IMG/VR virus record: IMGVR_UViG_3300028558_000016 | Location: 186,001-250,000 of that record | DNA: 64,000 nt | Strand: one strand, 5' to 3' | Shown: positions 8,168 through 36,235 of the stretch, piece after piece | Layout of the letters: each line of letters begins with the position of its first letter | Numbering within the stretch: the first letter of the stretch is position 1 | Notes under the pieces: model-generated | Seen by the model: the letters and a program-made list of their open reading frames with translations, nothing else | Database searches by the model: none | What the model was told of the DNA's origin: nothing | Program-made: the position numbers and the translations under genes

Positions 8168-8404
8168 ATGAAAAGAGTAAAATTATTCGAGGATTTCCAT
8201 AACGATCTTAATGCACTTCACGAAGGTTGGTTCAGCGAGATCGACATCATAGGAAAAGAAGCCGCAACTAAAGAAGAATTTATCACAAAGGTAAAAGAAC
8301 TTTTAAAGAAGGCAGCAAATCCAGAAGAAGCAACTAAGCCGGAAGCTTTGGAATATTGGGCTTCTCCTTACTTTGATAAGGATGGCAAGAAAAAAGCTGA
8401 ATAA
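8168..8404 (+). CDS. Small protein with CTS-like leader MKRVKLFEDF (78 aa)
   Basis: ATG at 8168 directly after the upstream stop; leader shared with many ORFs in the window. Confidence 0.7.
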   Translation: MKRVKLFEDFHNDLNALHEGWFSEIDIIGKEAATKEEFITKVKELLKKAANPEEATKPEALEYWASPYFDKDGKKKAE

Positions 8405-8424
8405 AAAAATGGTTTATAAACCCA

Positions 8425-8475
8425 TCCATGAATAGCATTCATGGACTAAATGCCTTTCCGAACGAAAGGCATTTT
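8425..8475 (+). terminator. Tandem hairpins; the second is a rho-independent terminator
   Basis: tccatgaat-agc-attcatgga (8425-8445) and aaatgcctttc-cgaac-gaaaggcattt (8448-8474). Confidence 0.65.
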
Positions 8476-8483
8476 ACTTTAAC

Positions 8484-8780
8484 ATGAAAAAGTTTCTTCT
8501 CATATTATTTCTCATAGCATCCTTGATTGGTGTTGCTCAAACTGGTGGAAGACATCGAGAGGGTAAAAATCAAAAGAGGCTTCACCACCGCATAACAAAG
8601 AAATGGAAATACAGATCAACTCCTGGTTGGAAAAATAAGGACAAGAGTCTGTTTCATTGGAATGTGACCAAGGGTAAAAGGTCGAGAAATAAAATGCAAT
8701 TAAGAATAAACACTGAAAGAGCCAGAAGAAGGATACATGGCAATGATGTGTTCGCTAAAAGAAAATACAAGAGAGTTTAA
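8484..8780 (+). CDS. Highly basic small protein with signal-peptide-like N-terminus
   Basis: MKKFLLILFLIASLIGVAQ followed by K/R/H-rich sequence. Confidence 0.6.
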   Translation: MKKFLLILFLIASLIGVAQTGGRHREGKNQKRLHHRITKKWKYRSTPGWKNKDKSLFHWNVTKGKRSRNKMQLRINTERARRRIHGNDVFAKRKYKRV

Positions 8781-9484
8781 TCTTCGTAACGTTCTGAGAA
8801 ACCGTCCAACTCTTCTTTAAGCATCTTGTCAGTTTCTTTTTCTATCAAAAGCTTCTTGGCTATCTTCCATTCACTGTAACTGCTCCAACCCATTAATTTG
8901 CTAATCTTTGGTTCTAAGTTCTGTCTCTCAATTCTATTTGATAGCTCTTGTAATTCGCTTTCGAGCTGTGGGTTAATTACTATTCTATGAGTAATATAAT
9001 GAGGTTGTGTTTTAGTAACGAACATCCAAGGCTTCTTGAATTCAAACACCCACGAACCTCCTCTACCATATTTATGCATCTTCCATCTTTTCTCAAAACA
9101 ATTTTGTTGTTTTGTTGTAAGCTTACCTGCTGCAAGAAGTTTATTCCACTCCTTATGATCGATGCCAGCAACTTCTTGTAAGATCGGTTTCTTTGTTTTT
9201 GTTTTGTAGTCTTTATATTCAAACTTCTTATCTCTTGATAAAATAGTATTCTGAATCATTTTTAAAATGCCTCTATAAAAATCGGCTTCCTTGCTCTTTG
9301 CAACATCTTCACGCATGACAAAGAAACGTTTGTATCCCCAACGTTCAGGTTTAGGAAGTTCAACCCAATTAAGGCTTCTCTTTCCTTGCATGAGACGCCA
9401 TTTCTTCTTCCAAAGAGAAATGAGCTCCTTCTCATTTTCAAATTTATCCATGCGCCTTTGGCGTCTTTTTCCTACCTCTTTCAT
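8777..9484 (-). CDS. Hypothetical basic protein (235 aa)
   Basis: Long ORF, ATGA-coupled to the upstream minus-strand ORF. Confidence 0.7.
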   Translation of the reverse strand: MKEVGKRRQRRMDKFENEKELISLWKKKWRLMQGKRSLNWVELPKPERWGYKRFFVMREDVAKSKEADFYRGILKMIQNTILSRDKKFEYKDYKTKTKKPILQEVAGIDHKEWNKLLAAGKLTTKQQNCFEKRWKMHKYGRGGSWVFEFKKPWMFVTKTQPHYITHRIVINPQLESELQELSNRIERQNLEPKISKLMGWSSYSEWKIAKKLLIEKETDKMLKEELDGFSERYED

Positions 9485-9660
9485 TTTAATAAAAAATAAA
9501 TTGTTAGCAATACAACTATTCCTAATGCTATTATTAGTTTGGCTCTTCTGTTTTTCTTCTTTTTCTTCTTGTTGCCACCGCCATCTCCATCACCGATGCT
9601 TCCGACAATCTCAACCGTTGCATCTATTAATGCTTCAGCTATTTCTCCACCTTCTATCAT
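9481..9660 (-). CDS. Small tail-anchored membrane protein (59 aa), not in the ORF track
   Basis: MIEGGEIAEAL...GDGDGGGNKKKKKKNRRAKLIIALGIVVLLTIYFLLK*; ATGA overlaps at both ends. Confidence 0.65.
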   Translation of the reverse strand: MIEGGEIAEALIDATVEIVGSIGDGDGGGNKKKKKKNRRAKLIIALGIVVLLTIYFLLK

Positions 9661-10247
9661 ACTTTAATTTTTTTTATTTCCACGTCAACGAAATCAACAC
9701 CAGGGAAAACATCCTTAACGTATTTTTCTATTTCTTCTTTCTTGTTATTATTAAATACCGTAATAGCTAAAAATTGTTTGTCATCATTATTCCAGTAAGC
9801 ATATACATTTTCGATTTCAGGATCATTGTGAAATTTAGCTTCAATTGATTTTGCAACTGTTTTATAAATTTCTGTTGGTTCCTTCTCCCAGCATGAAACA
9901 CAAAAATGTATTTCATTATCTCCCATCAATTTCAATTGCTCAGCAGTCCATTCCATATTACACTGAGCGCAATATTCATAAAATCCCCAAAGAACAATTT
10001 TTTCTATTCCAAACTCTCTTATTTGTTCCATCTTTCCATCAACAGCTTTCAACAAATCATCTATGTCTCCGTCGCAATCTAATAAATAGTGTACTTTTCC
10101 TGGCTGAGCTTTTGACTCAAGCATCTTACACGAAACATATTTACCGATGGTCAGTTCTATATTCTTTCTTATATCTTCAGCAGCCATTGCATTTCCAGCA
10201 TCCTGCATGTTTAATTGGTCAGAATCGAAATTTAAGTGATATTCCAT
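9657..10247 (-). CDS. Hypothetical protein (196 aa)
   Basis: ORF, TAATG-coupled to the upstream nucleotidyltransferase. Confidence 0.7.
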   Translation of the reverse strand: MEYHLNFDSDQLNMQDAGNAMAAEDIRKNIELTIGKYVSCKMLESKAQPGKVHYLLDCDGDIDDLLKAVDGKMEQIREFGIEKIVLWGFYEYCAQCNMEWTAEQLKLMGDNEIHFCVSCWEKEPTEIYKTVAKSIEAKFHNDPEIENVYAYWNNDDKQFLAITVFNNNKKEEIEKYVKDVFPGVDFVDVEIKKIKV

Positions 10248-11296: not shown

Positions 11297-11603
11297 TTAT
11301 TTCCTTTATTATGTCTTTTACAAATTTTAAAACTTTATACTTCCCAGAGCTCAATTCATTATAAAATGCTTCCCATTCACCGTAAGCCAATTCGTTATTC
11401 TTACTTTCGAGAAATTTTAAAATCTCTTCTGTATATTTGGTTTCAACAAATTTTGTTGTCACTCTTCTGGTTTCGCCGTCCACTACAACATAAGTGGCCA
11501 ACCCATACTTTGGAGCTGCATATTTTGATGGAAAATCTGGTGCATTATTATTCCCCGTTCGCATCGGTAACAATTGATTTTGTATTTTATGAACCTGTCT
11601 CAT
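11247..11603 (-). CDS. Hypothetical protein (118 aa)
   Basis: ORF with ATGA overlap to the upstream gene. Confidence 0.55.
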   Translation of the reverse strand: MRQVHKIQNQLLPMRTGNNNAPDFPSKYAAPKYGLATYVVVDGETRRVTTKFVETKYTEEILKFLESKNNELAYGEWEAFYNELSSGKYKVLKFVKDIIKEINGRISIGGNKNAQGTI

Positions 11604-11863: not shown

Positions 11864-11882
11864 CTGTGGCCTTTTGATCGCT

Positions 11883-11891
11883 AATATATAC
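11883..11891 (+). promoter_or_regulatory. Putative late promoter AATATATAC
   Basis: Recurring motif, 7 nt before ATG 11899. Confidence 0.5.
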
Positions 11892-11898
11892 AATAGGT

Positions 11899-12195: not shown

Positions 12196-12992
12196 GCACA
12201 GTAACAGATATTTTAGGAAAGATCTTCAAAAAGGAAAACAGGGAATTCATTCTCGTTGTTGCCTTAGGGATCGTCATCATGCTTTGGTGGAGAGGCTGCA
12301 GCAAAACCAACGACGAGAAAGCTGAAATGAAAAGACAGCAAGAAATAGCAGCCCAGAACAATAGAGCTTTAACCGACAGCTTGAGACTTGTCAAAAACAG
12401 AGCTGGAGAAATTGAAGCGATAAAATCGTCTTTCGTTTCCAAGCTTTCTGATCTTGAACAGCTAAACAGAGATTTATATGCTGAGTCGAAGAAAGAGATT
12501 GGAAATCTTAAAGCTTTAATCAAGGGAAGCCTTGATGCAAGCAGCGGAGACGTTGTCATATCTAATGAATTGAAAAGCTATCCTGATGGAAAAACCTACG
12601 GGCTTCTATTTGACAAGACGAGAATAGACAGCGGAATGGTTTGGAGCATCAAAGGCGAAAGCAGATTCAAATTGGAGAACAACACCATATTTCCAGGACA
12701 GACTGAGATATTCAATAATGACATGAAGCTTAAAGTAGTTCTTGGTTTCAAAGAGAACAAAGACAACTATGAAGTATTTGCAAGGTCAGCATCTCCATTC
12801 GTAAAATTCGACGATCTCAGCGGAGTAATGCTTATTCCGAAAAAGGCAGATCCATTGTTAACGCCTCCAGCCAAGAACAAGAGATTTGGTCTTGGAATAA
12901 ACATCGGATATGGAGTTGGATTCTTAAACAAACAAGTGATGCTGACTCCATACGTCGGCTTTGGTCTTCAATATAACTTACTTAAATTCTAA
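12192..12992 (+). CDS. Membrane-anchored coiled-coil protein with C-terminal amphipathic beta-hairpin; spanin-like candidate
   Basis: N-terminal TM ending WWRGCS, coiled coil, C-terminus KRFGLGINIGYG...PYVGFGLQYNLLKF. Confidence 0.55.
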   Translation: MSTVTDILGKIFKKENREFILVVALGIVIMLWWRGCSKTNDEKAEMKRQQEIAAQNNRALTDSLRLVKNRAGEIEAIKSSFVSKLSDLEQLNRDLYAESKKEIGNLKALIKGSLDASSGDVVISNELKSYPDGKTYGLLFDKTRIDSGMVWSIKGESRFKLENNTIFPGQTEIFNNDMKLKVVLGFKENKDNYEVFARSASPFVKFDDLSGVMLIPKKADPLLTPPAKNKRFGLGINIGYGVGFLNKQVMLTPYVGFGLQYNLLKF

Positions 12993-15037
12993 TGAGCTTC
13001 ACACAAAGATTTGTACAACTTACCGATTTCATCATGCTTGAATACAGGTACACAAGCCCTGTTACTCCTGACGAATTCAATTATAGCTTTACAAGAATAG
13101 TAAACAATCACATGGGTGGAATAATCCAACTCATGAATCCCGATGGAGCCATCGATGACACTGGAAACGTTAGAGAAAGATCGGCAGTGCAAACTGCGTC
13201 TGGAACCTATGTTGACACAGACAAGGACCAGGTTCCTGATTTCTTGACATACGACCAAAGTCTTGGAAATATTTCAACAACAGTTATCACAGGTGCAAAC
13301 ACTCCTTATGATACGTTGAGATTTCACATTGTCTCTGGTTACAACTTTGAAGACAAGGACGGAGTTATCGCTCAGATCACAGCAATGGAAAGATCTGGAA
13401 AACCAATGCAACTTGCAAATGTGGTGTTCTTGAAAGATGCGGATTTCTTCGTGTTCAACGCAAGACCGATTTGGCTTGGCGATAGATTATATGACAGATA
13501 TTTTGAATGCAAAGTTCCATCGGTAAAGCTGATCAACGACATATTCTATTCTCTCGAAGGAAATCCTGGTCAGGTAAATACTCTTGTCGCAAAGATAACT
13601 TCAAACGGACTTGGTTTTTTACGAGCAGCTCCATTAAACATTTCTATAACAGACATCTCATCCACGACGGTTCAAACCGTTGGCGGTGCAAGATACAAAA
13701 ACTATAAAATCGGTGGAACCAAGGTTGTTCCTCTAAATCAATCTGACGAATTTGGATTGTTGAGCGCGGTAGTTCAACCTTCTCCTGTTGGTGATTATTT
13801 TGAATACTTCGCTTCATGGGCAGGTGGATTCATAGAAGACTTTTTGTTTAACGCAAACACTCTTCCAGGAAACAATTACATCGTTCTACATGAGATAAGA
13901 GTATTTGAACAACAAGGATCTGCTTTCACGTTGACTGACACCTTGCAAATGATCCAAGAAGACAAATTCGATCAGCCAAGGAAATTCAGACCTATATTGA
14001 CCAATGCAGACAGAGACGTTTCCTTCACGTTGGAATACACAGTTAGATTATACAACAAGGCAGACTCATCTCAGATAATAAGAACAGCAAACTACACAAG
14101 CTTCAATCCAAAGGAATGGGGCTTAAAGATTCAACCTCTCAAGCTTCTAAATGAGCCTGAGCCGTTCATCATATACAACAGAGTTGTTGCAGGTCCAACA
14201 TTTCAAAACGAAGCTTTTGTTAATACAATAGCAGACGTTCAACCGTTCAATACTAAATTTGTTCCATCATTCTTTGACAGGTTCAGCGTCAACATCCATC
14301 ATGACACAGTTATCGTGGATAAGAACGGACAGCTTGTTGTTGACAGAACATCCACGACCACTTTGGTTTACGGACAAGGAGATTGCAACATCATCGTGAA
14401 TCCTTTCGATAACTTTTTTAAGTTCACCATATTGAAAACTAATGGAACTGAAACACCAACTCCTTTGGATCTTGGTAGCAGCGCCATGTATTATCTCGTG
14501 TTCATTGACAACCAAAACAAGAAGCAAAGATTTCCATCATCGGTAGATCCTGTTCTTGCCGATCCTTCTAAGGGAGACGTGTTGTTTAAGGTTCCTGAAG
14601 CTGATGCGACAAACATCGTGACATTCACGACAAAGGAATTTTATATAGTTTCCAAGTTCACTGATGGAGTTGAGACTCAAATATATCAAGGAGTTTACAA
14701 CAAACCTGCAGACATTCAAGCTGTCAAGACTTCTAATGCAGCTCTTCAAACTTCACAGAGCACAGCAATAGAAACAAAGATAACAGAAATAACAACTAAA
14801 CAGGACGACATCATTGCACAGACTAATGCAATCAAGAATTCAGGATTGACTCAGCAAGCAAATGCAATTTCAGTTAAGGTGGAAATTCCAGGATTGGCAG
14901 CAACTGTTCCAGCAGATTCGATGAATTCAATTGTTGCGAGCATAGTTCCAGTTTCGATCTCCAAGAAATCTGCTTCTACACAAGCGACTGACGATAAGCT
15001 GAAGGCGCAAGCAGATCAAAACAAAGCAAGTAACTAA
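12992..15037 (+). CDS. Large virion structural protein (681 aa)
   Basis: Beta-rich; in a late operon upstream of a tail-tube-fold gene. Confidence 0.55.
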   Translation: MSFTQRFVQLTDFIMLEYRYTSPVTPDEFNYSFTRIVNNHMGGIIQLMNPDGAIDDTGNVRERSAVQTASGTYVDTDKDQVPDFLTYDQSLGNISTTVITGANTPYDTLRFHIVSGYNFEDKDGVIAQITAMERSGKPMQLANVVFLKDADFFVFNARPIWLGDRLYDRYFECKVPSVKLINDIFYSLEGNPGQVNTLVAKITSNGLGFLRAAPLNISITDISSTTVQTVGGARYKNYKIGGTKVVPLNQSDEFGLLSAVVQPSPVGDYFEYFASWAGGFIEDFLFNANTLPGNNYIVLHEIRVFEQQGSAFTLTDTLQMIQEDKFDQPRKFRPILTNADRDVSFTLEYTVRLYNKADSSQIIRTANYTSFNPKEWGLKIQPLKLLNEPEPFIIYNRVVAGPTFQNEAFVNTIADVQPFNTKFVPSFFDRFSVNIHHDTVIVDKNGQLVVDRTSTTTLVYGQGDCNIIVNPFDNFFKFTILKTNGTETPTPLDLGSSAMYYLVFIDNQNKKQRFPSSVDPVLADPSKGDVLFKVPEADATNIVTFTTKEFYIVSKFTDGVETQIYQGVYNKPADIQAVKTSNAALQTSQSTAIETKITEITTKQDDIIAQTNAIKNSGLTQQANAISVKVEIPGLAATVPADSMNSIVASIVPVSISKKSASTQATDDKLKAQADQNKASN

Positions 15038-15585
15038 TGATTATAAATAGCAGGTCATCCAATTTTTTATTCACGTTTCCAAAGGGATTCTTTTCTAAGG
15101 CTGTCATTGACAAGTACACGCCTTATGTAAAGAGAAATCCTTTGCCGTACGATAATTTAGAAAATTTCATGGCAGCCCAAATACAAAGCGTAACGTTTCC
15201 TACTTTAAGCATGGAACCTGTTAGACAGACAAGGCTTTATGGCAAGTCACAGGAATACAAGAACTCAACTCCAATTGCAGATTTATTTACGAGAGACATC
15301 CAGGTTACGTTTAAGTCATTGGACGGTTACATCAATTATTGGATATTCATGGAAAATGCCTTGGAGTATCTCAGCTTTGAGAACAAGACCCTTTATTTCG
15401 ACGATTTACAGATGAGGTTCTTGGACCAAGAAGGCCACGTCATCACGACAACTCAGTATAAAGGAACTTATTTCAAATCATTGTCAGAGGTGACCCTTTC
15501 TTATTCAGACAACAACCCTGACTTTAAGACATTTACTGCGACATTTGGGTTCTTTAAGATGGACATATTCGTTGACCACGATTAA
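15037..15585 (+). CDS. T4 gp3/gp19-fold tail tube or tail completion protein
   Basis: QIQSVTFPTLS...DIQVTFKSLDGYINYW...FKSLSEVTLSY pattern typical of tail-tube-fold proteins. Confidence 0.55.
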   Translation: MIINSRSSNFLFTFPKGFFSKAVIDKYTPYVKRNPLPYDNLENFMAAQIQSVTFPTLSMEPVRQTRLYGKSQEYKNSTPIADLFTRDIQVTFKSLDGYINYWIFMENALEYLSFENKTLYFDDLQMRFLDQEGHVITTTQYKGTYFKSLSEVTLSYSDNNPDFKTFTATFGFFKMDIFVDHD

Positions 15586-15592
15586 TATATAG
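15584..15592 (+). promoter_or_regulatory. Putative late promoter AATATATAG heading the CTS-leader cluster
   Basis: Recurring motif upstream of ATG 15612. Confidence 0.5.
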
Positions 15593-15611: not shown

Positions 15612-15833
15612 ATGAAGAACATCAAATTATTCGAGAATTTTAGAACCGATGATGCTAAGAAAGCATTTGATGCGGTAACAGAACTAAGCGCCCAAGAACT
15701 GGAAGAATTTCTGTTTGCACTTTCTAAATACTTTGATGACAGCAAAGAAGAATTAACCAACATGAACGCGGAAGACATAAGCAAATCTTTGCATGACGCT
15801 GCTGAAATGGTACAAAATAGATCAGGAAATTAA
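15612..15833 (+). CDS. CTS-leader protein MKNIKLFENF (73 aa)
   Basis: Shared N-terminal motif. Confidence 0.75.
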   Translation: MKNIKLFENFRTDDAKKAFDAVTELSAQELEEFLFALSKYFDDSKEELTNMNAEDISKSLHDAAEMVQNRSGN

Positions 15834-15834: not shown

Positions 15835-16674
15835 ATGAGAATAAAATTATTCGAGAACTTTAGCAAAGGCCCAGAGCTTTTGAATTCATTCCAGGATGCT
15901 GAAAGCAAGTTATCCGATAAAGATGGAATTGTATTGCCTGGAGTAACAGGAGACATGACTCATATTGAAGATGCCATTAAAGACATCCCACACAATGAGG
16001 CTTACGTTCTAATCACAGACCAAAGCAGTCACGTTGCTTCTTCATGGAAGAGCGATGTGTTTCTTGTTGGTGGAACTAAGGAAGGTGAAATGTCCATAAA
16101 ACAATATTTCGATGAAGAATGGACAGACCCAGCAGGTGGAACACACCGTGGAAACGAAGAAGATCCAGCCGCAGCTTATGAAGCCGAAGTCAAAGCCAAA
16201 AAAGTTCCATTGAAAGATTTATTAAAGAGTAAATCAATAGAGCCAGGTAATTTCCTTTCAATGAAAGGTTGGCCAAAAGCTCTTGTTGACGGAATAGATT
16301 ATGCTAAGAAAACAATATCTCTTCAATTCAAAGAAGATGGTCCTATAAATGATTATAAGTTCGATGATGAGTCTCTTGAAAAAGGAAATATCATGACAAA
16401 ATTATGGGAGCACGTAAACGAAGGAACCATGATCTCAAAGAGAAATATGGATCTTGACGCATTCAAACACCAAGGTTCTTTCTTCAATAGAGAACCTCAT
16501 TCAAACGATTCTCCTGTTCATGGTAAATCTATAAAAGAACTCAACGAAGAAAGATCTGGCGATCTTTTAATGGAACTAACTAACGTCATAACAAGATATA
16601 AAACTAAGATGAAGCCAGAAGCTATCTTTGATGTTTTACATCTTTTAGCTGAAAGACAAAAGAACGAATTTTAA
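15835..16674 (+). CDS. CTS-leader protein MRIKLFENF (279 aa)
   Basis: ATG at 15835, one nt after the upstream stop; shared motif. Confidence 0.75.
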   Translation: MRIKLFENFSKGPELLNSFQDAESKLSDKDGIVLPGVTGDMTHIEDAIKDIPHNEAYVLITDQSSHVASSWKSDVFLVGGTKEGEMSIKQYFDEEWTDPAGGTHRGNEEDPAAAYEAEVKAKKVPLKDLLKSKSIEPGNFLSMKGWPKALVDGIDYAKKTISLQFKEDGPINDYKFDDESLEKGNIMTKLWEHVNEGTMISKRNMDLDAFKHQGSFFNREPHSNDSPVHGKSIKELNEERSGDLLMELTNVITRYKTKMKPEAIFDVLHLLAERQKNEF

Positions 16675-16675: not shown

Positions 16676-16927
16676 ATGGAAAAACTAAAACTGTTTGAAG
16701 CATTCGTCAATGAAGACGATATAAGAGCAAGAGGAGTTATTGACAGCAAAGAAGCTTTAGTTGCATTCATGACATCTCTTGTTAGAGGTGAAGTTGCACA
16801 GCTCATAGGTGGAAAGATGACACAAACAAACATCAAAATAATCTTGGCTGACATTGGCTTCGATCAAATCGAAGAAGCTTTAGATGAGATTAAGAAAGAA
16901 GTTGAAAGATTAAAAAAAGAAATGTAA
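16676..16927 (+). CDS. CTS-leader protein MEKLKLFEAFVNE (83 aa)
   Basis: Shared motif. Confidence 0.75.
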   Translation: MEKLKLFEAFVNEDDIRARGVIDSKEALVAFMTSLVRGEVAQLIGGKMTQTNIKIILADIGFDQIEEALDEIKKEVERLKKEM

Positions 16928-16929: not shown

Positions 16930-17298
16930 ATGACATTCGAGGAATATTACAACAAGAAGGTTTCTGAATCGCAAGACGATTTCAAACTATTCACGGACTT
17001 CAAGTCTGAAGAGAACAAAGGACTTTATTATCTGACTGAGCAAGAAAATGCTCAGATAGACGAATATGTAAAGATGTTTGAGAGCGAACATGGAAATGAC
17101 CTGTCTAAACTTGACGAGGCTTTCTTTGGAAAAATCATGGGTGGTGTTGCTGGTTTCTTAGTTGGACCGACCATCGGCAAGATCATCGCAAACGCACTTG
17201 GTATCGAAAAAGGAATTTTGTTTGACATGTTCACAAGCAGATTGGTTTCTACCGCTCTTGGATCTGCCATAGGAAAATCCATCGGCCAAAAGAAATAA
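16930..17298 (+). CDS. CTS-leader protein MTFEEY with Gly-rich amphipathic C-terminal helices
   Basis: Leader plus a second DFKLFTDF copy; FFGKIMGGVAGFLVGPTIGKIIANALG. Confidence 0.7.
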   Translation: MTFEEYYNKKVSESQDDFKLFTDFKSEENKGLYYLTEQENAQIDEYVKMFESEHGNDLSKLDEAFFGKIMGGVAGFLVGPTIGKIIANALGIEKGILFDMFTSRLVSTALGSAIGKSIGQKK

Positions 17299-17399
17299 TG
17301 AAGCCGTTTCATGATATGTGGATGGCATGGATAACATGCTACATTGCAATGCTGCAAACCCCATTCATGATATTAAAAGAATCTACAAAGAAGAAATGA
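17298..17399 (+). CDS. 33-aa peptide MKPFHDMWMAWITCYIAMLQTPFMILKESTKKK
   Basis: TAATG overlap at its start and ATGA overlap at its end. Confidence 0.5.
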   Translation: MKPFHDMWMAWITCYIAMLQTPFMILKESTKKK

Positions 17400-17587
17400 G
17401 AATCAATAAATACGACGATTTTGACATGAACGAGGGATATGCAGAAACTCTTAAGCTGGTAGTTTCTTCCATTAAAAACGCTTCAGACGAAGAGATCGAT
17501 AAAATCAGTCAAATACTCAGAGCCAAATTAACGTGGGGCAACATCAAGGACATTGCCGACGTCTTACATGTAGAAATACAAAAATAA
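17396..17587 (+). CDS. CTS-leader protein MRINKYDDFDMNE (63 aa)
   Basis: ATG at 17396; leader variant. Confidence 0.65.
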   Translation: MRINKYDDFDMNEGYAETLKLVVSSIKNASDEEIDKISQILRAKLTWGNIKDIADVLHVEIQK

Positions 17588-17593: not shown

Positions 17594-18139
17594 ATGAAAC
17601 GAATAAAGGATTTTAATTCATTCAATGAATCTCTTGAAGTATGGGCACCTAAAGTAGCATACACTAATACTTTGTACATCATGCCTAAGAAAGATCCAGA
17701 TTTGGATAAGGCAGACATCGAAGGAAAAGAAATAACTCCAAAGGTTCCTCAATTCGATTTAGTAAAAACCCTAACCATAATATTAGCAGATGGAAATTTG
17801 TCTGCTAAAGCAGCTCAAATATTTCCTAATACCGATCTCACCAAAGCTATAAAGAATCCAGACATGCTTGGTCCTGAAGAGAAAGACAAATTGATTCAGA
17901 TATACAATAACATAATATTAAAAGATTATGTGCTTAGACAAGAATATGACGTGCTTCCAGAATCCATAGACGAAAACATGTGCCCTGAATGTGGCGAGGA
18001 ATATACGTCGCAATGCAAATGCATGACAACTCACAAAAAGACTTTAGAAGATTTAAAAAGAGGACATGGTAAAACTTGTCCCAACGGACATACGTGGACG
18101 TACGACACTCCAGATGGAAAAGTAATAGTAGTGAAGTAA
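17594..18139 (+). CDS. CTS-leader protein with C-terminal zinc-ribbon-like domain
   Basis: MKRIKDFNSFNE; CPECG...QCKC...CPNGH. Confidence 0.7.
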   Translation: MKRIKDFNSFNESLEVWAPKVAYTNTLYIMPKKDPDLDKADIEGKEITPKVPQFDLVKTLTIILADGNLSAKAAQIFPNTDLTKAIKNPDMLGPEEKDKLIQIYNNIILKDYVLRQEYDVLPESIDENMCPECGEEYTSQCKCMTTHKKTLEDLKRGHGKTCPNGHTWTYDTPDGKVIVVK

Positions 18140-18238
18140 ATGAGTTGTTGTTTAAATTCACCAAAGAAGAAAATAGAGAAACCTAAGGTAAAAGAAAAGC
18201 CAAAGGTAAAAGTAAGCAAAGAGAAGAAGACGAAATGA
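18140..18238 (+). CDS. 32-aa Lys-rich peptide MSCCLNSPKKKIEKPKVKEKPKVKVSKEKKTK
   Basis: Starts right after the upstream stop; ATGA overlap with the next gene. Confidence 0.5.
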   Translation: MSCCLNSPKKKIEKPKVKEKPKVKVSKEKKTK

Positions 18239-19065
18239 AACACATAAGATCATACAAGCAACATCTCGAGGAAGGACTCATAAAAACTTATGACGTCACA
18301 GAATTTGTCAAGCATTTCAACAAGATGATTGCGGCAAAAGATTACAAGAAGCTTTTATCGAATGCAAAAGTTGATCCTGATGCGCACGTGTGGTTGATCG
18401 TAAAAATTAAACCAGACACAATTAATTTTGCAAAAGAATTAGTCAGTCTAATGAACGTTCTTGGATACTATGTGTCTGATGTAAATTTTCGTGGATATAA
18501 CATTGATGACGAGGCAAACCATCCACCGAAGAGCAACGACGATTTTTTAAAAATAGTAAAACAGGCTGAAGAAGAAAATGCGAGTGCTATTCAATTGCTC
18601 ATTGAACCTAAATTTGAAGAAGAGGCCGAAGGAAAATTCACAATTCTATATCACATCACAGAAGAAAAACATTTGAAGAAAATTCAAGAGATGGGATTGG
18701 TTCCTAAGTCTAAATCTAAAGTAACATATCATCCAGAAAGAATTTATCTTGCGACCAAAGAAGCAATGGCATTCCTTTTTACTAAATACAAAGATTACGT
18801 AAAAGATCCAGTCGTTCTCAGAGTCAACGTTAAAGGCTTGAAACTGTATCCAGACATTAATGCTGGAAAAGGAACGTATTTTACCACAACAAATATCTCT
18901 CCGGATAAAATCAAACCGTTGAAACAGGATGCGTATGACATAATGAATAAATATTTGAAAAATAAACCAGCTTCAAATCAAGGTTGGGATATTGAAAAAT
19001 TATTGTCAAATTTATTAGGACAAGCTCAAAAAGGAATAATATCAACGCAAAATGCGACACATTAA
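18235..19065 (+). CDS. CTS-leader protein with Tpt1/KptA-like ADP-ribosyltransferase-fold domain
   Basis: LYHITEEKHLKKIQEMGLVPK...RIYLAT...VVLRVNV...FTTTNISPDKI. Confidence 0.6.
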   Translation: MKHIRSYKQHLEEGLIKTYDVTEFVKHFNKMIAAKDYKKLLSNAKVDPDAHVWLIVKIKPDTINFAKELVSLMNVLGYYVSDVNFRGYNIDDEANHPPKSNDDFLKIVKQAEEENASAIQLLIEPKFEEEAEGKFTILYHITEEKHLKKIQEMGLVPKSKSKVTYHPERIYLATKEAMAFLFTKYKDYVKDPVVLRVNVKGLKLYPDINAGKGTYFTTTNISPDKIKPLKQDAYDIMNKYLKNKPASNQGWDIEKLLSNLLGQAQKGIISTQNATH

Positions 19066-19498
19066 ACTATATGAGGAATTTGTGGTTGACGAGGGATTAA
19101 TGAAATCTCTTGGCAAGCTCGCAAAGTTTGCTTTAATTCTTCCTAAGGTGATGCAGTATGTTGGATTCGCTTCATCTGCATTAGGAAAACACTTCAACAA
19201 CGATAAGGCCCAAGACATTGCAAAGTTTCTCGTTCAAAATGGAAAATCTCTTGACAACAAATACAAACAAACTGTTGCTTCAGCTTTAGCACCGTTCTTA
19301 AAAGACCCTTCAAAGAAAGACCAAGTCGCAAAGGATTACATTTATTATTTAACAGCCAAACACGTTGGCGGAGGTTTCTCTGACAAAAGCATGGCATTAC
19401 ACGATCCGCATAAATCAGCTATGAACGTTATAGGAAGCGTTGATCCAAGCAACATATTAAACAATGCCAGAAAAATATTTCCACAATTATTGAAATGA
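19052..19498 (+). CDS. CTS-leader protein MRHIKLYEEFVVDE (148 aa)
   Basis: Shared motif. Confidence 0.75.
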   Translation: MRHIKLYEEFVVDEGLMKSLGKLAKFALILPKVMQYVGFASSALGKHFNNDKAQDIAKFLVQNGKSLDNKYKQTVASALAPFLKDPSKKDQVAKDYIYYLTAKHVGGGFSDKSMALHDPHKSAMNVIGSVDPSNILNNARKIFPQLLK

Positions 19499-20082
19499 AG
19501 CACTTAAAGCTATACGAGGAATTTGTGGATGAGGCAATACTTCTTCCAGGACAACAGAAGATTAAAAGAGCTGATGCAATGGAAATTGCTAAGACTATAA
19601 TTGAAGGCATGGGTTTTAAGTATGTGGATCCTGACACTGTAACAACCAATTATGAGTTTGAGAAGAACGTTGGAATCCCAGTTGGTTCAATAAGAAGAAA
19701 GAGGCCTGAAGTTGGAGACATCGACATCATAATAACTTCACCAATAAACACGATGAAGCTTAGACAAGAACCATGGGCCAAAACCGTTTCAGGCGGAGAC
19801 AAACAAGTTAATTTTATTTATGAGGATGGAACAATTAAACGAAAAGTGAATTTATTTTCATTCGTTGATCCTGCAACTTTCGGCGGAGCTCTATTACATA
19901 CTACCGGTTCTCATCAATACAATGTAAGATTAAGATTCGTTGCCAACCAAAGAGGATTTGGAAAACTCAGCCAACATGGATTATTTGATGACAATGGAAA
20001 ATTAATAGCAGGTCCAACGGAAGCTTCAATACAGAAGGCGATGAAGGTCACGCAACGCGAACCTAAAGAACGAGAGAAATAA
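19495..20082 (+). CDS. CTS-leader minimal DNA polymerase X-like protein (palm + thumb)
   Basis: VGSIRRKRPEVGDIDIII; ALLHTTGSHQYNVRLR; LSQHGLF; TEASI...EPKERE. Confidence 0.8.
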   Translation: MKHLKLYEEFVDEAILLPGQQKIKRADAMEIAKTIIEGMGFKYVDPDTVTTNYEFEKNVGIPVGSIRRKRPEVGDIDIIITSPINTMKLRQEPWAKTVSGGDKQVNFIYEDGTIKRKVNLFSFVDPATFGGALLHTTGSHQYNVRLRFVANQRGFGKLSQHGLFDDNGKLIAGPTEASIQKAMKVTQREPKEREK

Positions 20083-20096: not shown

Positions 20097-20498
20097 ATGA
20101 AACACATTAAATTATTCGAGAATTTCAATGAAGGCAAAGCGAAAGCCAATCCAACCGCTGACGAGAATTTCAAACCAATAGGTCCTGAGATAACTTACAA
20201 AAATGAATTCAATGAAACTACGTTCATCGGACAAATCTATAAAGAAAAATACCAAAATGACAGAATTGCTCTTGAAATGATCGGCACAAAAGGAAAATAC
20301 AAAGGAGAAACAATTCTCGTTGCAACCATAAATGTTCCATCAGAAAAAATTGCAGATGATGAAGTCATCATTAAAAACTATTCTGAGAACGAAGGAATTC
20401 TCGATGTTTTGATTGACGCAAAGATAATTTCCAAGCCAATCAGACAAGTTTCCACTGGTCACGTTTCAGCTCCAGTTTGCAAGCTTCTTATCAAATAA
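20097..20498 (+). CDS. CTS-leader protein MKHIKLFENFNE (133 aa)
   Basis: Shared motif. Confidence 0.75.
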   Translation: MKHIKLFENFNEGKAKANPTADENFKPIGPEITYKNEFNETTFIGQIYKEKYQNDRIALEMIGTKGKYKGETILVATINVPSEKIADDEVIIKNYSENEGILDVLIDAKIISKPIRQVSTGHVSAPVCKLLIK

Positions 20499-31624: not shown

Positions 31625-31858
31625 ATGGGACTCAAGAAATTTGAAGACTTCGAGCATCATCTCGCAGAAGAAGACAAGAATACATTGGCAAACGACCATG
31701 CCAATGCAAAGAAGGAACTATTGGATTCCTTTGATAAGCATGGAAAAAAATTTTATACCAAGAATCATTTAGTAGATGATAAAGGTGGAGACTTAATTGC
31801 CATCGCAACAGGCGGTGAAAAATCAGTCATCGTTAAAGTAATAGGATACGAAGTATAA
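31625..31858 (+). CDS. CTS-leader protein MGLKKFEDF (77 aa)
   Basis: Shared motif. Confidence 0.7.
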   Translation: MGLKKFEDFEHHLAEEDKNTLANDHANAKKELLDSFDKHGKKFYTKNHLVDDKGGDLIAIATGGEKSVIVKVIGYEV

Positions 31859-33776: not shown

Positions 33777-34361
33777 ATGGAATTCAACGAGAACAACATA
33801 AATGAAGCAAAGAACTTCTTAAGAGAGAAAGCATCTGGAAAGGTGTTAAACTTCAACGACTTCATATTTGAAGCAGAAGAGAACGGATATGGCCAACAGG
33901 CATTCTTCTTTGCGGTTAATGGCGACACAGCTAATTATTTCTTTAAGATCAAAGATGGTCAAGAAACACATGCTTTGGTTGTATCCATTGGAAAGTTTGC
34001 AAAAACAATTCAGCCAACAGAACAAAAGACTGACTTCGGAGTTTTAGGAATAACAACTCTAAGTGAAGACGATCTTGACCAAGCTGTAGTTGACAAAGGA
34101 AAATTCACAACAAACGAAGAGATCATTACAGCAAATGAGTCGTTCACAGGAAAATTCCTTGAGCACTTAGCTCTTATAATAGACGATTACCTTCAGAAGA
34201 ATCCTAAGGTGACTAAGTTTTATGACGAAATGCAAATGTGCTTTCAAGCACCTGATTACGATAACAAATTCTCTGTGTCATTAGCAAAATGGCCTGGCGG
34301 TAATGAAGCATGGAAATTACAAACCATGGAGAAGGGTAAATTAAACATCATCACCAAGTAA
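33777..34361 (+). CDS. Probable head-internal protein (KVLNFNDFIFEAEE)
   Basis: Leader-like motif near the N-terminus; AATATATAA at 33749. Confidence 0.65.
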   Translation: MEFNENNINEAKNFLREKASGKVLNFNDFIFEAEENGYGQQAFFFAVNGDTANYFFKIKDGQETHALVVSIGKFAKTIQPTEQKTDFGVLGITTLSEDDLDQAVVDKGKFTTNEEIITANESFTGKFLEHLALIIDDYLQKNPKVTKFYDEMQMCFQAPDYDNKFSVSLAKWPGGNEAWKLQTMEKGKLNIITK

Positions 34362-34549
34362 TGAAGCATATCAAATTATTTGAGGAATTCAAAATAGACG
34401 AAGCTGAAACAGGAGCTTATCCTGCTCCTAAGTTTGCAAGAAAGCCTGCAGCCGGTGATTCTGGTTATAATTATGTTGCAAAACAATTTGGTGCAACTCC
34501 AGCTCCTAAGAAGAAAAAGAAGAATTCAAGGACTGAAGAGTCTAAATAA
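34361..34549 (+). CDS. CTS-leader protein MKHIKLFEEF (62 aa)
   Basis: Shared motif. Confidence 0.75.
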   Translation: MKHIKLFEEFKIDEAETGAYPAPKFARKPAAGDSGYNYVAKQFGATPAPKKKKKNSRTEESK

Positions 34550-34971
34550 TGGAACACTTAAAAGATTTTAATATTTTTGAAGCAGAGACGTCAAGTTATG
34601 ATACTCCTAAATTCATAGTCAAACCTTATCCAGGCGATAAAGGTTATGAATTGACAAGAAAGAAATATCACAGATTTCTGTGGGTTCTTCCTCAACTTGG
34701 AAAAGGTGTTATCGATAAAGGAGAAAATCCTCCAGTAACTGAAGCTGCTTATGATGATACAATAGATAGAGACTCATTCAATCCAGCTGAGATCTCAGGT
34801 ATGGGAAGAGCACAGGAATTTCCAGGAGGCAAAACTCCAGGATACACTAAAGATACTGGGACTGATTATTTGCCAAGTGACAAATACGAAGATCCCGACG
34901 AGAAGAAGGCCAAAAAGTTAAAGAAGATAAAAGACTTTGAGGACTTTATAAATGGAGAAGAAACAAAATAA
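34549..34971 (+). CDS. CTS-leader protein with the motif at both ends
   Basis: MEHLKDFNIFEAE ... KKIKDFEDFINGEETK. Confidence 0.7.
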   Translation: MEHLKDFNIFEAETSSYDTPKFIVKPYPGDKGYELTRKKYHRFLWVLPQLGKGVIDKGENPPVTEAAYDDTIDRDSFNPAEISGMGRAQEFPGGKTPGYTKDTGTDYLPSDKYEDPDEKKAKKLKKIKDFEDFINGEETK

Positions 34972-34983
34972 AAAACATAAACA

Positions 34984-35379
34984 ATGATTTACGTAATCGG
35001 TTTAATAGTTGTAGCGGCAATAGCATTCGTATTATGGAAAAGCCATAAGACTGTAATGTGCAAATGCGATAAATGCACAGATGAAAATTGCAAATGCGAC
35101 GAGAACAAATGCGACGATAATTGCAAATGTCATGATGTTGCTGAAGCTCCAGTTCCATATTTGAATGGTCACAGCAAGAAAATAACAGCTGATCCTGCTG
35201 ACGAACCAACTGATTCTTGTGATACAGCAGGTCACGAACCTTGCGACACTTGTACAGATGATGAACCTAAAGCAGCTGAAGCTCCTAAGGAAGAACCTAA
35301 AAAGGAAGAACCAAAGAAGGAACAGCCTAAAAAGAAACCAGCACCAAAGCCTAAGAAAAAAGGTAAAGGTAAAAAGTAA
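34984..35379 (+). CDS. Membrane-anchored Cys-rich (metallothionein-like) protein with a P/K/E-rich tail
   Basis: N-terminal TM; CKCDKC...CKC...C...CKCH; 11 Cys. Confidence 0.65.
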   Translation: MIYVIGLIVVAAIAFVLWKSHKTVMCKCDKCTDENCKCDENKCDDNCKCHDVAEAPVPYLNGHSKKITADPADEPTDSCDTAGHEPCDTCTDDEPKAAEAPKEEPKKEEPKKEQPKKKPAPKPKKKGKGKK

Positions 35380-35816
35380 TGCTGATTTCCATTGTATATC
35401 TGCTTTGGATTCTATTTGCAATCTATGAAGGAAAAAGAGAAGCATTCTATTTTTCTTGCAAGATTAAAGCTCCACAGCAACAGGCATACAAAATAGACGA
35501 GCACGTCATGTTCACTATACAGAGGACTTTTATTGCCTCAATGGCAATTTTAGCTTGTCGAGTGGATTGGTTGAATTCTGTTTTAGTATTGTTTTCGTTT
35601 GGATTATGTTTTCCATTTTTTCACGATGGGATGTATTACTTGACGAGACATAAGCTTGATGGAATATACGTAAAGGGTTGGTTTGATCAAAGCACAACAT
35701 CGTCAGCTAAGTCTGACAAATTACATTTATTTGATCCAATACCAAGAACATTAATTTTTGGTTTGTCTTTAGGATTAATTATTTATGAAATAATAAAATT
35801 TTGGAAATGGGCATAA
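35379..35816 (+). CDS. Multi-pass membrane protein
   Basis: Several hydrophobic segments. Confidence 0.65.
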   Translation: MLISIVYLLWILFAIYEGKREAFYFSCKIKAPQQQAYKIDEHVMFTIQRTFIASMAILACRVDWLNSVLVLFSFGLCFPFFHDGMYYLTRHKLDGIYVKGWFDQSTTSSAKSDKLHLFDPIPRTLIFGLSLGLIIYEIIKFWKWA

Positions 35817-36235
35817 AGAGATACAGCGATTTCGTTAACGTCAACGAAAAAGTCGAACAATACGATTTTGAATTCCACACAGTAGTGGTTGCAAAGAACA
35901 TTGATTTCGATAATGAGCCTGTGGACAATTCTAAGGAACAATACATTGAAAAAGGAGATTTAACCATCCATTGGATAATGGATTTCGATAATAGAAAATA
36001 CGGAATCAATAGTATGGCGCCTGTGATCAAAAAGATCTCAGGATTTTATACTTTGGTCACTCCACAAGAACAAGGCAGAGATATTGAAGATGAAGTGGAA
36101 ATTCTAATGGATGAAAAATCTGATTGGAAATTCGAGAATGATTTTCAAAGCGAATTCAAATTCGGTTACTCAATTGTTCCAGGAAGCATAGAGATAGATT
36201 TCAAAGACAAGACAATCAAAATACTTTATTATTGA
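35807..36235 (+). CDS. CTS-leader protein MGIKRYSDFVNVNE
   Basis: ATG 35807; leader variant. Confidence 0.65.
   Translation: MGIKRYSDFVNVNEKVEQYDFEFHTVVVAKNIDFDNEPVDNSKEQYIEKGDLTIHWIMDFDNRKYGINSMAPVIKKISGFYTLVTPQEQGRDIEDEVEILMDEKSDWKFENDFQSEFKFGYSIVPGSIEIDFKDKTIKILYY

What the first reader, a model, noticed from the sequence alone, without database searches (positions are those of the whole stretch)
8168..36235. A large family of proteins sharing a T4-like capsid-targeting leader: a modular packaged-effector system
Seen: about 14 ORFs begin with M-K-x-(I/L)-K-(L/D/R/K)-(F/Y)-x-x-F followed within a few residues by an E site (8168, 15612, 15835, 16676, 16930, 17396, 17594, 18235, 19052, 19495, 20097, 31625, 34361, 34549, 35807). 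The leader is conserved at DNA level (aaattattcgag at 8168, 15612, 15835, 20097), while everything downstream is unrelated. Most copies sit behind (A/G)ATATATA motifs. Established: T4 internal proteins carry an N-terminal capsid-targeting sequence (IPIII MKTYQEFIAE) that directs packaging, is cut after Glu by gp21, and the mature proteins are ejected into the host. Inference: the leader is a portable packaging tag fused to varied cargo (ART-fold, Pol X, zinc ribbon, amphipathic helices), giving the phage an interchangeable set of proteins delivered before any transcription.
Basis: partly seen in the sequence, partly recalled or inferred. Interest (0 to 1): 0.88.

Follow-up and report, generated by a model that had tools for sequence, protein, structure and literature searches.

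The report
Capsid-targeting tag on phage cargo proteins
A 482-kb uncultured phage puts the same 13-residue N-terminal tag, a longer relative of phage T4's capsid-targeting sequence, on at least ten otherwise unrelated proteins in this window, so they are probably packed into the phage head, although no virion data exist.

Summary
The parts after the leader are unrelated.

The leader (M-K-H-I/V-K-L-F-E-x-F-[ILV]-N-E) is selected as a peptide and is virus-specific. A profile built only from metagenomic leaders, run against 949 candidate N-termini of phage T4, ranks T4 internal proteins III, II and I at 2, 3 and 6.

In 160 loci picked only by capsid-protein homology, 148 of 174 leader genes lie inside T4-type head modules (gp20 portal, gp21-type S77 protease fused to scaffold, gp23 capsid protein). 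One cargo domain is a stand-alone protein in 97 of 104 homologs, including Bacteroidota chromosomes, so the tag is portable.

The best reading is a T4-type capsid-targeting sequence, expanded to at least 26 tagged genes in this phage and 33 in a 462-kb relative. Packaging, cleavage and ejection are inferred, not shown. No cultured relative sampled carries the tag, and this phage's own head genes were not retrieved.

The parts
8168..8404 (+). Leader-tagged ORF, 78 aa (MKRVKLFEDF...), acidic. It starts 1 nt after the stop of gene 7132-8166.
   Evidence: Profile score 25.4 bits; contains the exact 12-mer at 8180; lies in the unit headed by RATATATA at 7120.
15612..15833 (+). Leader-tagged ORF, 73 aa (MKNIKLFENF...). 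First gene of the cluster that follows the tail-tube gene.
   Evidence: 23.5 bits; exact match to the DNA pattern; RATATATA at 15584, 20 nt upstream.
15835..16674 (+). Leader-tagged ORF, 279 aa (MRIKLFENF..., one residue shorter). Cargo unknown.
   Evidence: 15.9 bits; 12-mer at 15844; no Pfam, PHROG or NCBIfam hit.
16676..16927 (+). Leader-tagged ORF, 83 aa (MEKLKLFEAFVNE...), with V-N-E at residues 11-13.
   Evidence: 21.4 bits.
17594..18139 (+). Leader-tagged ORF, 181 aa (MKRIKDFNSFNE...). The C-terminal part has Cys/His pairs (possible zinc ribbon, read directly from the sequence).
   Evidence: 18.3 bits; translation; no family hit.
18235..19065 (+). Degenerate leader ORF, 276 aa (MKHIRSYKQHLEEGLI...). 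The family keeps an invariant E13-G14-L15-I16. Possible ADP-ribosyltransferase-superfamily cargo, not shown.
   Evidence: 14.1 bits; family alignment A4, in which member P0015 has a canonical leader; weak PDB hits to Tpt1 and DarT, E = 0.2-0.5.
19052..19498 (+). Leader-tagged ORF, 148 aa (MRHIKLYEEFVVDE...), basic (pI 9.6).
   Evidence: 23.7 bits; pI.
19495..20082 (+). Leader-tagged minimal DNA polymerase X, 195 aa (MKHLKLYEEFVDE|A...).
   Evidence: 27.4 bits; Pfam DNA_pol_B_thumb 2.9e-15; PDB minimal 174-aa Pol X at 5e-12, aligned from query residue 59; all 9 homologs keep the leader and an invariant E13-A14.
20097..20498 (+). Leader-tagged ORF, 133 aa (MKHIKLFENFNE...). Its cargo domain (about residues 50-132) is elsewhere a free-standing protein of about 96 aa.
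   Evidence: 27.2 bits; phrog_37545 at residues 50-132; 97 of 104 homologs lack the leader, including chromosomal Bacteroidota genes; RATATATA at 20085, 4 nt before the ATG.
34361..34549 (+). Leader-tagged ORF, 62 aa (MKHIKLFEEFKIDE...), basic (pI 9.7).
   Evidence: 26.3 bits; exact match to the DNA pattern; lies in the chain headed by RATATATA at 33749.
34549..34971 (+). Borderline leader ORF, 140 aa (MEHLKDFNIFEAE...). Partial paralog of 34361.
   Evidence: 9.9 bits; similar to 34361 just after the leader, E = 1e-4.
15584..15591 (+). AATATATA promoter-like element heading the 15612-20082 gene chain. Identical or near-identical elements lie at 2578, 7120, 11883 (sheath/tube operon), 20085, 20557, 27011, 31595, 33749 and 53310.
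   Evidence: Enrichment and strand bias; position 4-49 nt upstream of ORF starts; in relative LR756500 the same element precedes the capsid, protease-scaffold and portal genes.
12992..15585 (+). Context: putative tail sheath (12992-15037) and tail tube (15037-15585), immediately upstream of the leader cluster.
   Evidence: Tube: phrog_45 at 4.6e-7. Sheath: inferred from position and from homologs in LR756500 and MaF61. Gene order matches LR756500.
16930..17587 (+). ORFs 16930-17298 and 17396-17587. They are passengers in the same operon.
   Evidence: 5.3 bits, and below the 3.3 bits of the last row listed.
31625..31858 (+). ORF 31625 (77 aa). The resemblance is weak and neither is supported as a member.
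   Evidence: 5.6 and 5.3 bits.

Best explanation
The leader is a capsid-targeting sequence of the phage T4 type, three residues longer than T4's. In this phage the canonical form is M-K-H-(I/V)-K-L-F-E-N-F-L-N-E.

Proposed mechanism:
1. The tagged genes are transcribed together with structural genes.
2. The short amphipathic N-terminal helix docks the nascent protein onto the scaffolding core of the assembling prohead. The two invariant aromatic residues, at positions 7 and 10, correspond to Tyr4 and Phe7 of the T4 tag.
3. A gp21-type (S77) prohead protease then cuts after the Glu of the [I/V/L]-x-E that ends the tag (positions 11-13, matching T4 Ile8 and Glu10).
4. This frees the mature cargo inside the head, from where it leaves with the DNA at the next infection.

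The tag is portable. It is fused to unrelated cargo: a minimal Pol X, small acidic and basic proteins, and a domain also found free-standing in Bacteroidota. In related phages the cargo includes CHAP, GNAT, ATP-grasp and Acb1-like 2H phosphoesterases. It also sits on conserved head-core genes.

Shown here: the family, its peptide-level conservation, its restriction to viruses, its profile similarity to the T4 tag, its placement in T4-type head modules of related phages, and its modular addition to cargo. Inferred: docking, cleavage, retention in the virion, ejection and late timing.
For: 1. Profile test. A profile made from 186 metagenomic leaders was run against 949 candidate N-termini from 143 kb of T4, both strands. 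ipIII ranks 2nd, ipII 3rd and ipI 6th. Rank 1 is gp61.1, which starts with a similar peptide. The T4 N-termini were read from record NC_000866.

2. Conserved positions. Positions left free in the search pattern are conserved only up to residue 13: H3 54%, [IVL]11 62%, N12 38%, E13 67%. F/Y7, F/Y10, [IVL]11 and E13 align with T4 residues 4, 7, 8 and 10. Those are the residues that mutagenesis showed to carry targeting (4, 7) and processing (8, 10) (PMC9026906).

3. Head-module placement. Related phages have Portal_T4 (5e-71), Peptidase_S77 fused to a scaffold (3e-14) and Gp23 (9e-43), with a leader gene between portal and protease. In 160 loci chosen only by capsid-protein homology, 174 leader ORFs score at least 12 bits. 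Of these, 148 lie inside the head module: 69 between portal and protease, 17 between scaffold and capsid gene, and 62 directly after the capsid gene. 111 of the 160 loci have at least one.

4. Composition. The genes after the capsid gene are Lys/Ala-rich and basic (pI 8.8-9.4), like T4 ipII and ipIII (9.3-9.5). The genes between portal and protease are acidic (pI 4.1-4.3), like T4 gp67 at the same map position (4.1).

5. Peptide-level selection. Codon choice in the leader follows the gene body at K2, F7, E8 and F10.

6. Virus specificity. In 596 Gb of cellular genomes there are 44, mostly chance matches such as C5-methyltransferase motif I; about 10 look phage-like, and all of those are on metagenome-assembled contigs.

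7. Lineage-specific variants. The window's phage uses MKHIKLFENF, LR756500 uses MKYIKEYEEF, and the genes after the capsid gene use MKRVKSYNEFIAE. This suggests co-evolution with a phage-encoded partner.

8. Portability. 97 of 104 homologs of the 20097 cargo lack the tag (median 98 aa, against 125 aa with it). The Pol X cargo has about 26 extra N-terminal residues compared with solved minimal Pol X.

9. Co-regulation. All members lie in units headed by RATATATA, the element that also heads the sheath/tube operon. In LR756500 it also heads the capsid, protease and portal genes. Bacteroidota-type TAnnTTTG promoters precede other genes, and none of them a tagged gene.
Against: - There is no physical evidence. 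The cultured relatives sampled (Tenacibaculum phage PTm1 and Flavobacterium phage MaF61) show no leader in the regions examined, so no virion proteome applies. The Lak-A1 region also has none.
- The head module of the window's own 482-kb contig was not retrieved. It was not among the best 80 capsid-protein relatives, and a 37-kb walk to the right did not reach it. The S77 protease is therefore inferred from LR756500.
- LR756500 itself has no leader gene inside its head module (L261).
- In the window the processing part is irregular. 15612 has R-T-D at positions 11-13, 8168 has H-N-D there, and 15835 has no site. Some copies may be targeted but not cut, or the model may be incomplete.
- T4 scores on the profile are modest (7.5-11.6 bits), because of the three-residue length difference.
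- The RATATATA element also precedes non-structural genes, such as RuvC here and many genes in the AT-rich LR756500, so 'late' is not established.
- Much of the cargo in related phages is ordinary cytoplasmic enzymes (ATP-grasp, GNAT, cytidylyltransferase, methyltransferase). Packaging has no precedent for these families.
Confidence: 0.68

Rival explanations
1. The leader is a prohead-core docking motif, but the tagged proteins are assembly factors or scaffold-like fillers. They would be degraded or expelled during maturation, as T4 gp22, gp67 and gp68 are. On this reading the proteins are not delivered effectors.
For: The most conserved tagged genes sit at the positions of T4 gp67/gp68 and next to the scaffold. 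The ones between portal and protease are acidic like gp67. Several window members are small and acidic (pI 4.5-5.5), which is unlike DNA-associated internal proteins.
Against: Many tagged proteins are folded enzymes or domains (Pol X, CHAP, GNAT, ATP-grasp, Acb1-like). They would be pointless as disposable filler. The cleavage determinant lies only at the end of the tag, as in T4 internal proteins, rather than throughout the protein as in scaffolds. By contrast, [LIV]-A-E repeats can be read in the scaffold part of the protease-scaffold fusions. Both roles can coexist, as they do in T4.
Confidence: 0.13
2. The leader is a tag for a different process unrelated to the capsid. Examples are timed degradation by a host or phage protease, binding to a common hub such as the ribosome, RNA polymerase or a membrane complex, or sorting to a phage compartment.
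For: It is a short amphipathic helix (hydrophobic moment 0.53-0.56) that could bind many partners. The cargo resembles host-takeover and anti-defence enzymes, which normally act in the cytoplasm. No virion data exist.
Against: This does not explain why a profile of the leader picks T4's internal proteins out of 949 candidates. It does not explain why 85% of leader genes near capsid genes are inside the head module. It also does not explain why the tag ends in the prohead-protease motif. There is no hydrophobic core of the signal-peptide kind (read directly from the sequences).
Confidence: 0.12
3. The conservation is at nucleic-acid level: an A/T-rich translation-initiation enhancer for a host with little Shine-Dalgarno use, or a recombination cassette that shuffles genes.
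For: A-ending codons are enriched at K5 and L6. Within the window an exact 12-mer is shared by 4 of 6 K-L-F-E copies, far above codon-usage expectation, and Glu8 is GAG in 7 of 8 copies against 29% GAG usage in the window's genes. Short homology of this kind could help move the tag between genes.
Against: Across 123 distinct genes, synonymous sites at K2, F7, E8 and F10 follow ordinary codon usage, while the amino acids are invariant. Lineage variants change the amino acids in a coordinated way. A nucleic-acid signal would not reproduce the T4 peptide. This is best seen as a secondary feature (recent spread by recombination within this genome), not as the function.
Confidence: 0.05

Closest known systems
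Capsid targeting sequence (CTS) of phage T4 internal proteins IPI, IPII and IPIII (Mullaney and Black 1996; reviews PMC3012670, PMC9026906)
   Same: Both are extreme N-terminal propeptides. Both have two aromatic residues three apart, followed by an aliphatic residue, any residue, then Glu. Both are fused to unrelated, fast-evolving cargo in a phage with a gp20 portal, a gp21-type S77 protease and a gp23 capsid protein. The profile of the leader ranks the T4 internal proteins at the top. The variant on genes after the capsid gene (M-K-R-V-K-S-Y-N-E-F-I-A-E) differs from the T4 tag, as read, essentially by a three-residue insertion.
   Different: The tag here is 13 residues rather than 10, with an extra basic/hydrophobic turn (I-K-L). 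It is carried by many more genes: at least 26 seen in about 110 kb of this phage and 33 in LR756500, against 3 internal proteins in T4. It is also present on conserved head-module genes and on recognisable enzymes. The host is probably Bacteroidota, not Enterobacteria. In several window copies the processing part is missing. Nothing has been tested experimentally.
T4 prohead core proteins gp67 and gp68, and T4 Alt (a packaged ADP-ribosyltransferase)
   Same: A conserved small acidic tagged gene lies between portal and protease, exactly where T4 has genes 67 and 68, and its pI matches gp67. Alt is the precedent for a packaged, processed enzyme (T4 record annotation; PMC9026906).
   Different: There is no detectable sequence similarity to gp67 or gp68 outside composition; the gene has no PHROG hit and no tblastn hit in the phage collection. 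T4 gp67, gp68 and Alt do not start with the IP-type tag.
Propeptides of ejection and inner-body proteins of giant phages phiKZ, 201phi2-1 and SPN3US (PMC5694885)
   Same: These are giant phages that package many proteins, which a related prohead protease processes after Glu.
   Different: Those propeptides are mostly longer than 100 residues. They are cut at A/S/G-x-E and share no common N-terminal tag. Here the tag is short and uniform and has an aliphatic residue at P3.
Cargo-loading peptides of encapsulins (recalled from general knowledge, not tested here)
   Same: A short portable peptide directs unrelated enzymes into an HK97-fold shell.
   Different: They are usually C-terminal, bind the shell protein directly, are not removed by a protease, and the cargo is not delivered to another cell.

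Membership tests
T4-type capsid targeting sequence / internal-protein system | The tag occupies the extreme N-terminus (first 10 or so residues from Met1) of the precursor. | tested here: met
   All members start at Met1 of ORFs that abut the preceding stop codon. Conservation collapses after residue 13.
T4-type capsid targeting sequence / internal-protein system | Sequence relationship to the T4 IP tag, including the residues needed for targeting (T4 positions 4 and 7). | tested here: met
   The leader profile ranks ipIII, ipII and ipI at 2, 3 and 6 of 949 T4 candidates. Invariant F/Y7 and F/Y10 align with T4 Tyr4 and Phe7. The T4 scores are modest (7.5-11 bits).
T4-type capsid targeting sequence / internal-protein system | Processing determinant: an aliphatic residue at P3 and Glu at P1 at the end of the tag (T4 positions 8 and 10). 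| tested here: inconclusive
   Met in the wider family: E13 67%, [IVL]11 62%. 82 of 97 leaders against 448 of 3173 other N-termini carry [ILVMF]-x-E at 11-16, a partly circular comparison. E13-A14 and E13-G14 are invariant in two cargo families. In the window 7 of 10 members fit at residues 12-14, two have a later site and one has none.
T4-type capsid targeting sequence / internal-protein system | The phage encodes a gp21-type prohead protease with a scaffolding core, a gp20 portal and a gp23 capsid protein. | tested here: inconclusive
   Met in tag-bearing relatives: Pfam S77, Portal_T4 and Gp23 in L090. The syntenic relative LR756500 has portal, protease-scaffold and gp23-like genes by tblastn. 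Not retrieved for the window's own contig.
T4-type capsid targeting sequence / internal-protein system | Unrelated cargo behind a conserved tag, with the tag transferable between proteins. | tested here: met
   Mature parts are unrelated. 37 Pfam families occur among 123 tagged proteins. The same cargo domain occurs with the tag in 7 homologs and without it in 97.
T4-type capsid targeting sequence / internal-protein system | Expression together with head-assembly genes. | tested here: inconclusive
   Leader genes lie inside head modules in 111 of 160 loci. A promoter-like element is shared with structural operons. A distinct host-type promoter class lies elsewhere. There are no expression data.
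T4-type capsid targeting sequence / internal-protein system | Physical incorporation into proheads, removal of the tag, presence in virions and ejection into the host. | not testable with these tools
   No cultured phage sampled carries the tag.
phiKZ/SPN3US-type ejection-protein propeptides | Long (mostly over 100 aa) N-terminal propeptides cut at A/S/G-x-E, with no shared tag. | tested here: not met
   The tag is 13 aa and uniform, and its P3 residue is I/V/L. The definition is taken from PMC5694885.
Nucleic-acid-level repeat (translation enhancer or mobile regulatory cassette) | Conservation of the nucleotides themselves, including synonymous positions. | tested here: not met
   Across 123 genes, synonymous sites follow the codon usage of the gene body. 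Only within this one genome is a 12-mer shared by four copies.

The most novel reading that the evidence does not exclude
A large, almost wholly uncultured clade of T4-related phages uses one recognisable 13-residue address label for everything it loads into the capsid. The clade includes genomes of 460-480 kb that probably infect Bacteroidota. If so, the full set of injected proteins can be read directly from sequence. That set would be dozens per genome, and would include a DNA polymerase X, a possible ADP-ribosyltransferase-like protein, Acb1-like anti-CBASS phosphodiesterases, acetyltransferases, cell-wall hydrolases and domains captured from the host.
Probability: 0.45. Interest if true: 0.85.

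Novelty: new variant of a known kind. Interest (0 to 1): 0.7.

Why it matters
Proteins that a phage injects with its DNA act before any phage gene is expressed. They are the first line against restriction, CBASS and similar defences. Today they can be found only by virion proteomics of cultured phages.

If this tag works like the T4 capsid-targeting sequence, it gives a sequence-only way to list candidate injected proteins. The list would cover thousands of uncultured aquatic and soil phages and very large phages. It would show that capsid loading by a portable tag is an old and expandable feature of the T4 lineage, not a T-even peculiarity. It would also offer a second, longer targeting peptide for packaging foreign proteins in phage heads.

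The host-derived domain that has gained the tag (20097) shows how new cargo is recruited.

Tried and rejected
- Full-text search for the peptide strings found no paper.
- tblastn of a 20-aa consensus against 50,697 phage records found only LR756500, at E = 8.
- tblastn of common tagged families and of the head-module tagged gene found no cultured phage carrying the tag.
- PHROG search of the conserved head-module tagged genes gave nothing useful. Pfam, PHROG and NCBIfam left most window cargo unannotated.
- I suspected a type-IX-secretion sorting domain on 7132-8166; Pfam and NCBIfam do not support it.
- I tried to reach the head module of the window's own contig. A capsid-protein search returned other contigs. 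Walking right with exact-protein look-ups covered contig positions 250-287 kb. It found six more tagged genes at 12 bits or more, topoisomerase VI, a second PolB piece and RecA, but no head genes. Synteny with LR756500 breaks there.
The profile search against PDB sequences was not significant.
- I did not run a profile search of 1.84 billion representatives. A 14-column profile (about 30 bits at most) cannot reach significance at that database size.
- I considered and rejected the idea that the L-I-N-E at the N-terminus of the gp23-like capsid proteins is a copy of the tag. Those N-termini resemble the start of T4 gp23 rather than the tag.

Full report
**What the window is.** The window is part of a 482,156-bp viral contig (JGI sample 3300028558, Ga0265326_10000002; also IMG/VR UViG_3300028558_000016). 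Window base 63353 corresponds to contig base 249,353. Recognisable genes are:
- a putative sheath (12992-15037) and a tail tube (15037-15585);
- a RuvC-like resolvase, a gp32-like SSB, a primase, a DnaB-type helicase and a DNA polymerase;
- an AAA ATPase, and an RNA-ligase/cytidylyltransferase fusion.

Gene order matches the 462-kb uncultured phage LR756500.1 over the whole window. Capsid-protein relatives of that group include Prevotella Lak phages, Tenacibaculum phage PTm1, Flavobacterium phage MaF61 and the 630-735-kb uncultured phages. A Bacteroidota host is therefore likely. It is also suggested by TAnnTTTG-type promoter boxes in five intergenic regions (the consensus is from general knowledge).

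**Checking the observation.**
- A regular expression for the leader at ATG starts hits 12 ORFs, all on the + strand.
- The degenerate DNA pattern has 3 exact matches against none expected.
- A 14-column profile built from 186 distinct metagenomic leaders scores ten window ORFs at 14-27 bits among 722 candidates: 8168, 15612, 15835, 16676, 17594, 18235, 19052, 19495, 20097 and 34361. 34549 is borderline at 9.9 bits.
- 31625, 35807, 16930 and 17396 do not stand out from the background.
- Residues after the leader are unrelated in all pairs except the neighbours 34361 and 34549.
- Only two members sit directly behind an (A/G)ATATATA element. However, each member lies in a tight co-directional gene chain headed by one, and the same element heads the sheath/tube operon.

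**The leader is a peptide signal and it is viral.**
- Positions that the pattern left free are conserved up to residue 13 and not beyond, giving M-K-H-I-K-L-F-E-(Q/N/E/D)-F-(I/V/L)-N-E.
- Codon choice at K2, F7, E8 and F10 does not differ from the bodies of the same genes. Only K5 and L6 prefer A-ending codons.
- The same pattern in 596 Gb of bacterial and archaeal genomes gave 44 stretches. Most are chance matches: cytosine methyltransferases whose motif I happens to fit, or very short ORFs. About ten look like the phage leader, all on metagenome-assembled contigs.
- Of 117 leader-selected loci, 83 share at least one other protein with the window's phage or with LR756500, so the carriers form one broad group.

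**Link to the T4 capsid-targeting sequence.** I read the N-termini of T4 ipII and ipIII from NC_000866; both are M-K-T-Y-Q-E-F-I-A-E. I then searched the metagenomic leader profile against every ATG with at least 50 following codons in 143 kb of T4.
- Of 949 candidates, ipIII, ipII and ipI rank 2, 3 and 6. Rank 1 is gp61.1, which begins with a very similar peptide.
- According to PMC9026906, the first ten residues of IPIII suffice for packaging. Targeting depends chiefly on residues 4 and 7, and processing on residues 8 and 10. Asp at position 10 blocks cleavage but not targeting.
- With a three-residue insertion, these four positions align with the four most conserved features of the leader: aromatic 7, aromatic 10, aliphatic 11 and Glu 13.
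- A lineage variant, M-K-R-V-K-S-Y-N-E-F-I-A-E, is nearly the T4 tag plus the insertion.

**Placement in head modules.**
- In locus L090 the tagged gene lies between a Portal_T4 protein and a Peptidase_S77 (gp21-type) protease fused to a coiled-coil scaffold. A Gp23-family capsid protein follows.
- T4 has the order 20, 67, 68, 21, 22, 23.
- I drew two samples of 80 loci each from IMG/VR by capsid-protein homology alone.
- Among 5,988 ORF-start candidates, 174 score at least 12 bits. Of these, 148 are inside the head module: 69 between portal and protease, 17 between scaffold and capsid gene, and 62 within 300 nt after the capsid gene. 111 of the 160 loci have at least one.
- The tagged proteins between portal and protease are acidic, like gp67. 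Those after the capsid gene are basic and Lys/Ala-rich, like ipII and ipIII.

**Portability.**
- All nine homologs of the minimal Pol X keep the leader and an invariant Glu13-Ala14. Solved minimal Pol X proteins align only from residue 59.
- The cargo of 20097 has 104 homologs. 97 of them lack the leader and are about 98 aa long, including genes on a 4.6-Mb Aurantibacillus contig and a 1.2-Mb Bacteroidota contig. Seven carry the leader and are about 125 aa. A few have intermediate N-termini.
- In the wider set the cargo includes ATP-grasp, GNAT, CHAP, DUF5824, 2H/Acb1-like, P-loop kinase, cytidylyltransferase, amine oxidase and methyltransferase domains.

**Scale.** Outside the window the same contig shows 16 more tagged ORFs at 12 bits or more: seven in L080, three in L006 and six in the right flank (four of the flank ORFs were first seen). 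That gives at least 26 in about 110 kb sampled. LR756500 has 33 at 12 bits or more, with its own variant M-K-Y-I-K-E-Y-E-E-F-(I/L)-N-E. The genes occur in tandem arrays of small ORFs.

**Timing.**
- RATATATA is enriched and strand-biased, and 10 of the 11 + strand copies lie 4-49 nt before an ORF start.
- In the window it heads structural units and all units with tagged genes. It does not head the SSB, primase, helicase or polymerase genes.
- In LR756500 it precedes the capsid, protease-scaffold and portal genes and many tagged genes, but also many others.
- I read it as a phage-specific, probably late, promoter. This is an inference.

**Weak points.**
- There is no virion, cleavage or ejection evidence.
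- No leader was found in the sampled regions of PTm1, MaF61 or Lak-A1.
- The window's own head genes were not recovered.
- Processing sites are irregular in three window copies.
- The ART-fold claim is unresolved.

**Verdict.** The finding is real. It is a new, expanded variant of a known kind of system.

Noticed in passing
L341:18966-19130 (phage T4 gene 61.1, - strand): T4 gp61.1, an uncharacterised 54-aa protein, begins M-K-T-F-K-E-F-I-K-E. It is the top hit of the leader profile in T4, above ipIII and ipII. It may be an unrecognised CTS-bearing protein.
   Followed up: no
window 2578, 7120, 20085 (also 11883): The RATATATA element ends only 4-8 nt before the ATG of the next gene. If it is a -10-like promoter box, transcripts from it would be leaderless or nearly so.
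   Followed up: partly
window, upstream of 39392, 45671, 48321, 55151 and 62320: These intergenic regions carry TAnnTTTG-like boxes (Bacteroidota sigma-A type), a second promoter class distinct from RATATATA. None precedes a tagged gene.
   Followed up: partly
window 51386-52849 and L344:16378-17592: Family-B DNA polymerase appears to be split into two genes about 24 kb apart. The same split occurs in LR756500 (about 263.9 kb and 249.6 kb).
   Followed up: partly
L344:11678-14504: The phage encodes both subunits of a topoisomerase VI (Topo-VIb transducer/HATPase and TP6A/Toprim), just right of the window.
   Followed up: no
window 28509-30527: A 672-aa fusion has an RNA-ligase-like N-terminal part and a cytidylyltransferase-like C-terminal part. 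It is conserved in LR756500 (36% identity).
   Followed up: no
window 36229-37236 (- strand): A Peptidase_M50 (site-2 protease family) gene lies on the opposite strand, directly after the second group of tagged genes.
   Followed up: no
window 8777-11905 (- strand): A block of five or six minus-strand genes of unknown function interrupts the otherwise + strand window, with a matching GC-skew dip at 8-12 kb.
   Followed up: no
window 15612-20498 compared with LR756500 283.3-281.9 kb: The 5-kb array of tagged genes sits between the tail tube and RuvC. LR756500 has only about 1.5 kb at that junction, so the array is a lineage-specific expansion at a conserved junction.
   Followed up: partly
L033:8471-9607: A tagged 379-aa protein lies between protease-scaffold and capsid gene. 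It consists largely of repeats of about 23 residues (G-Q-L-H-R-T-D-G-P-A...W-Y-L-N-G), reminiscent of MORN-type repeats.
   Followed up: no
IMG/VR tagged proteins (alignment A1): Two tagged proteins match Pfam Acb1 (anti-CBASS) and the 2'-5' RNA ligase superfamily, and three carry CHAP domains. If packaged, these would be pre-loaded anti-defence and wall-degrading enzymes.
   Followed up: partly
window 18140-18238: A tiny 32-aa, very Lys-rich ORF fills the only sizeable gap (95 nt) inside the tagged-gene operon.
   Followed up: no
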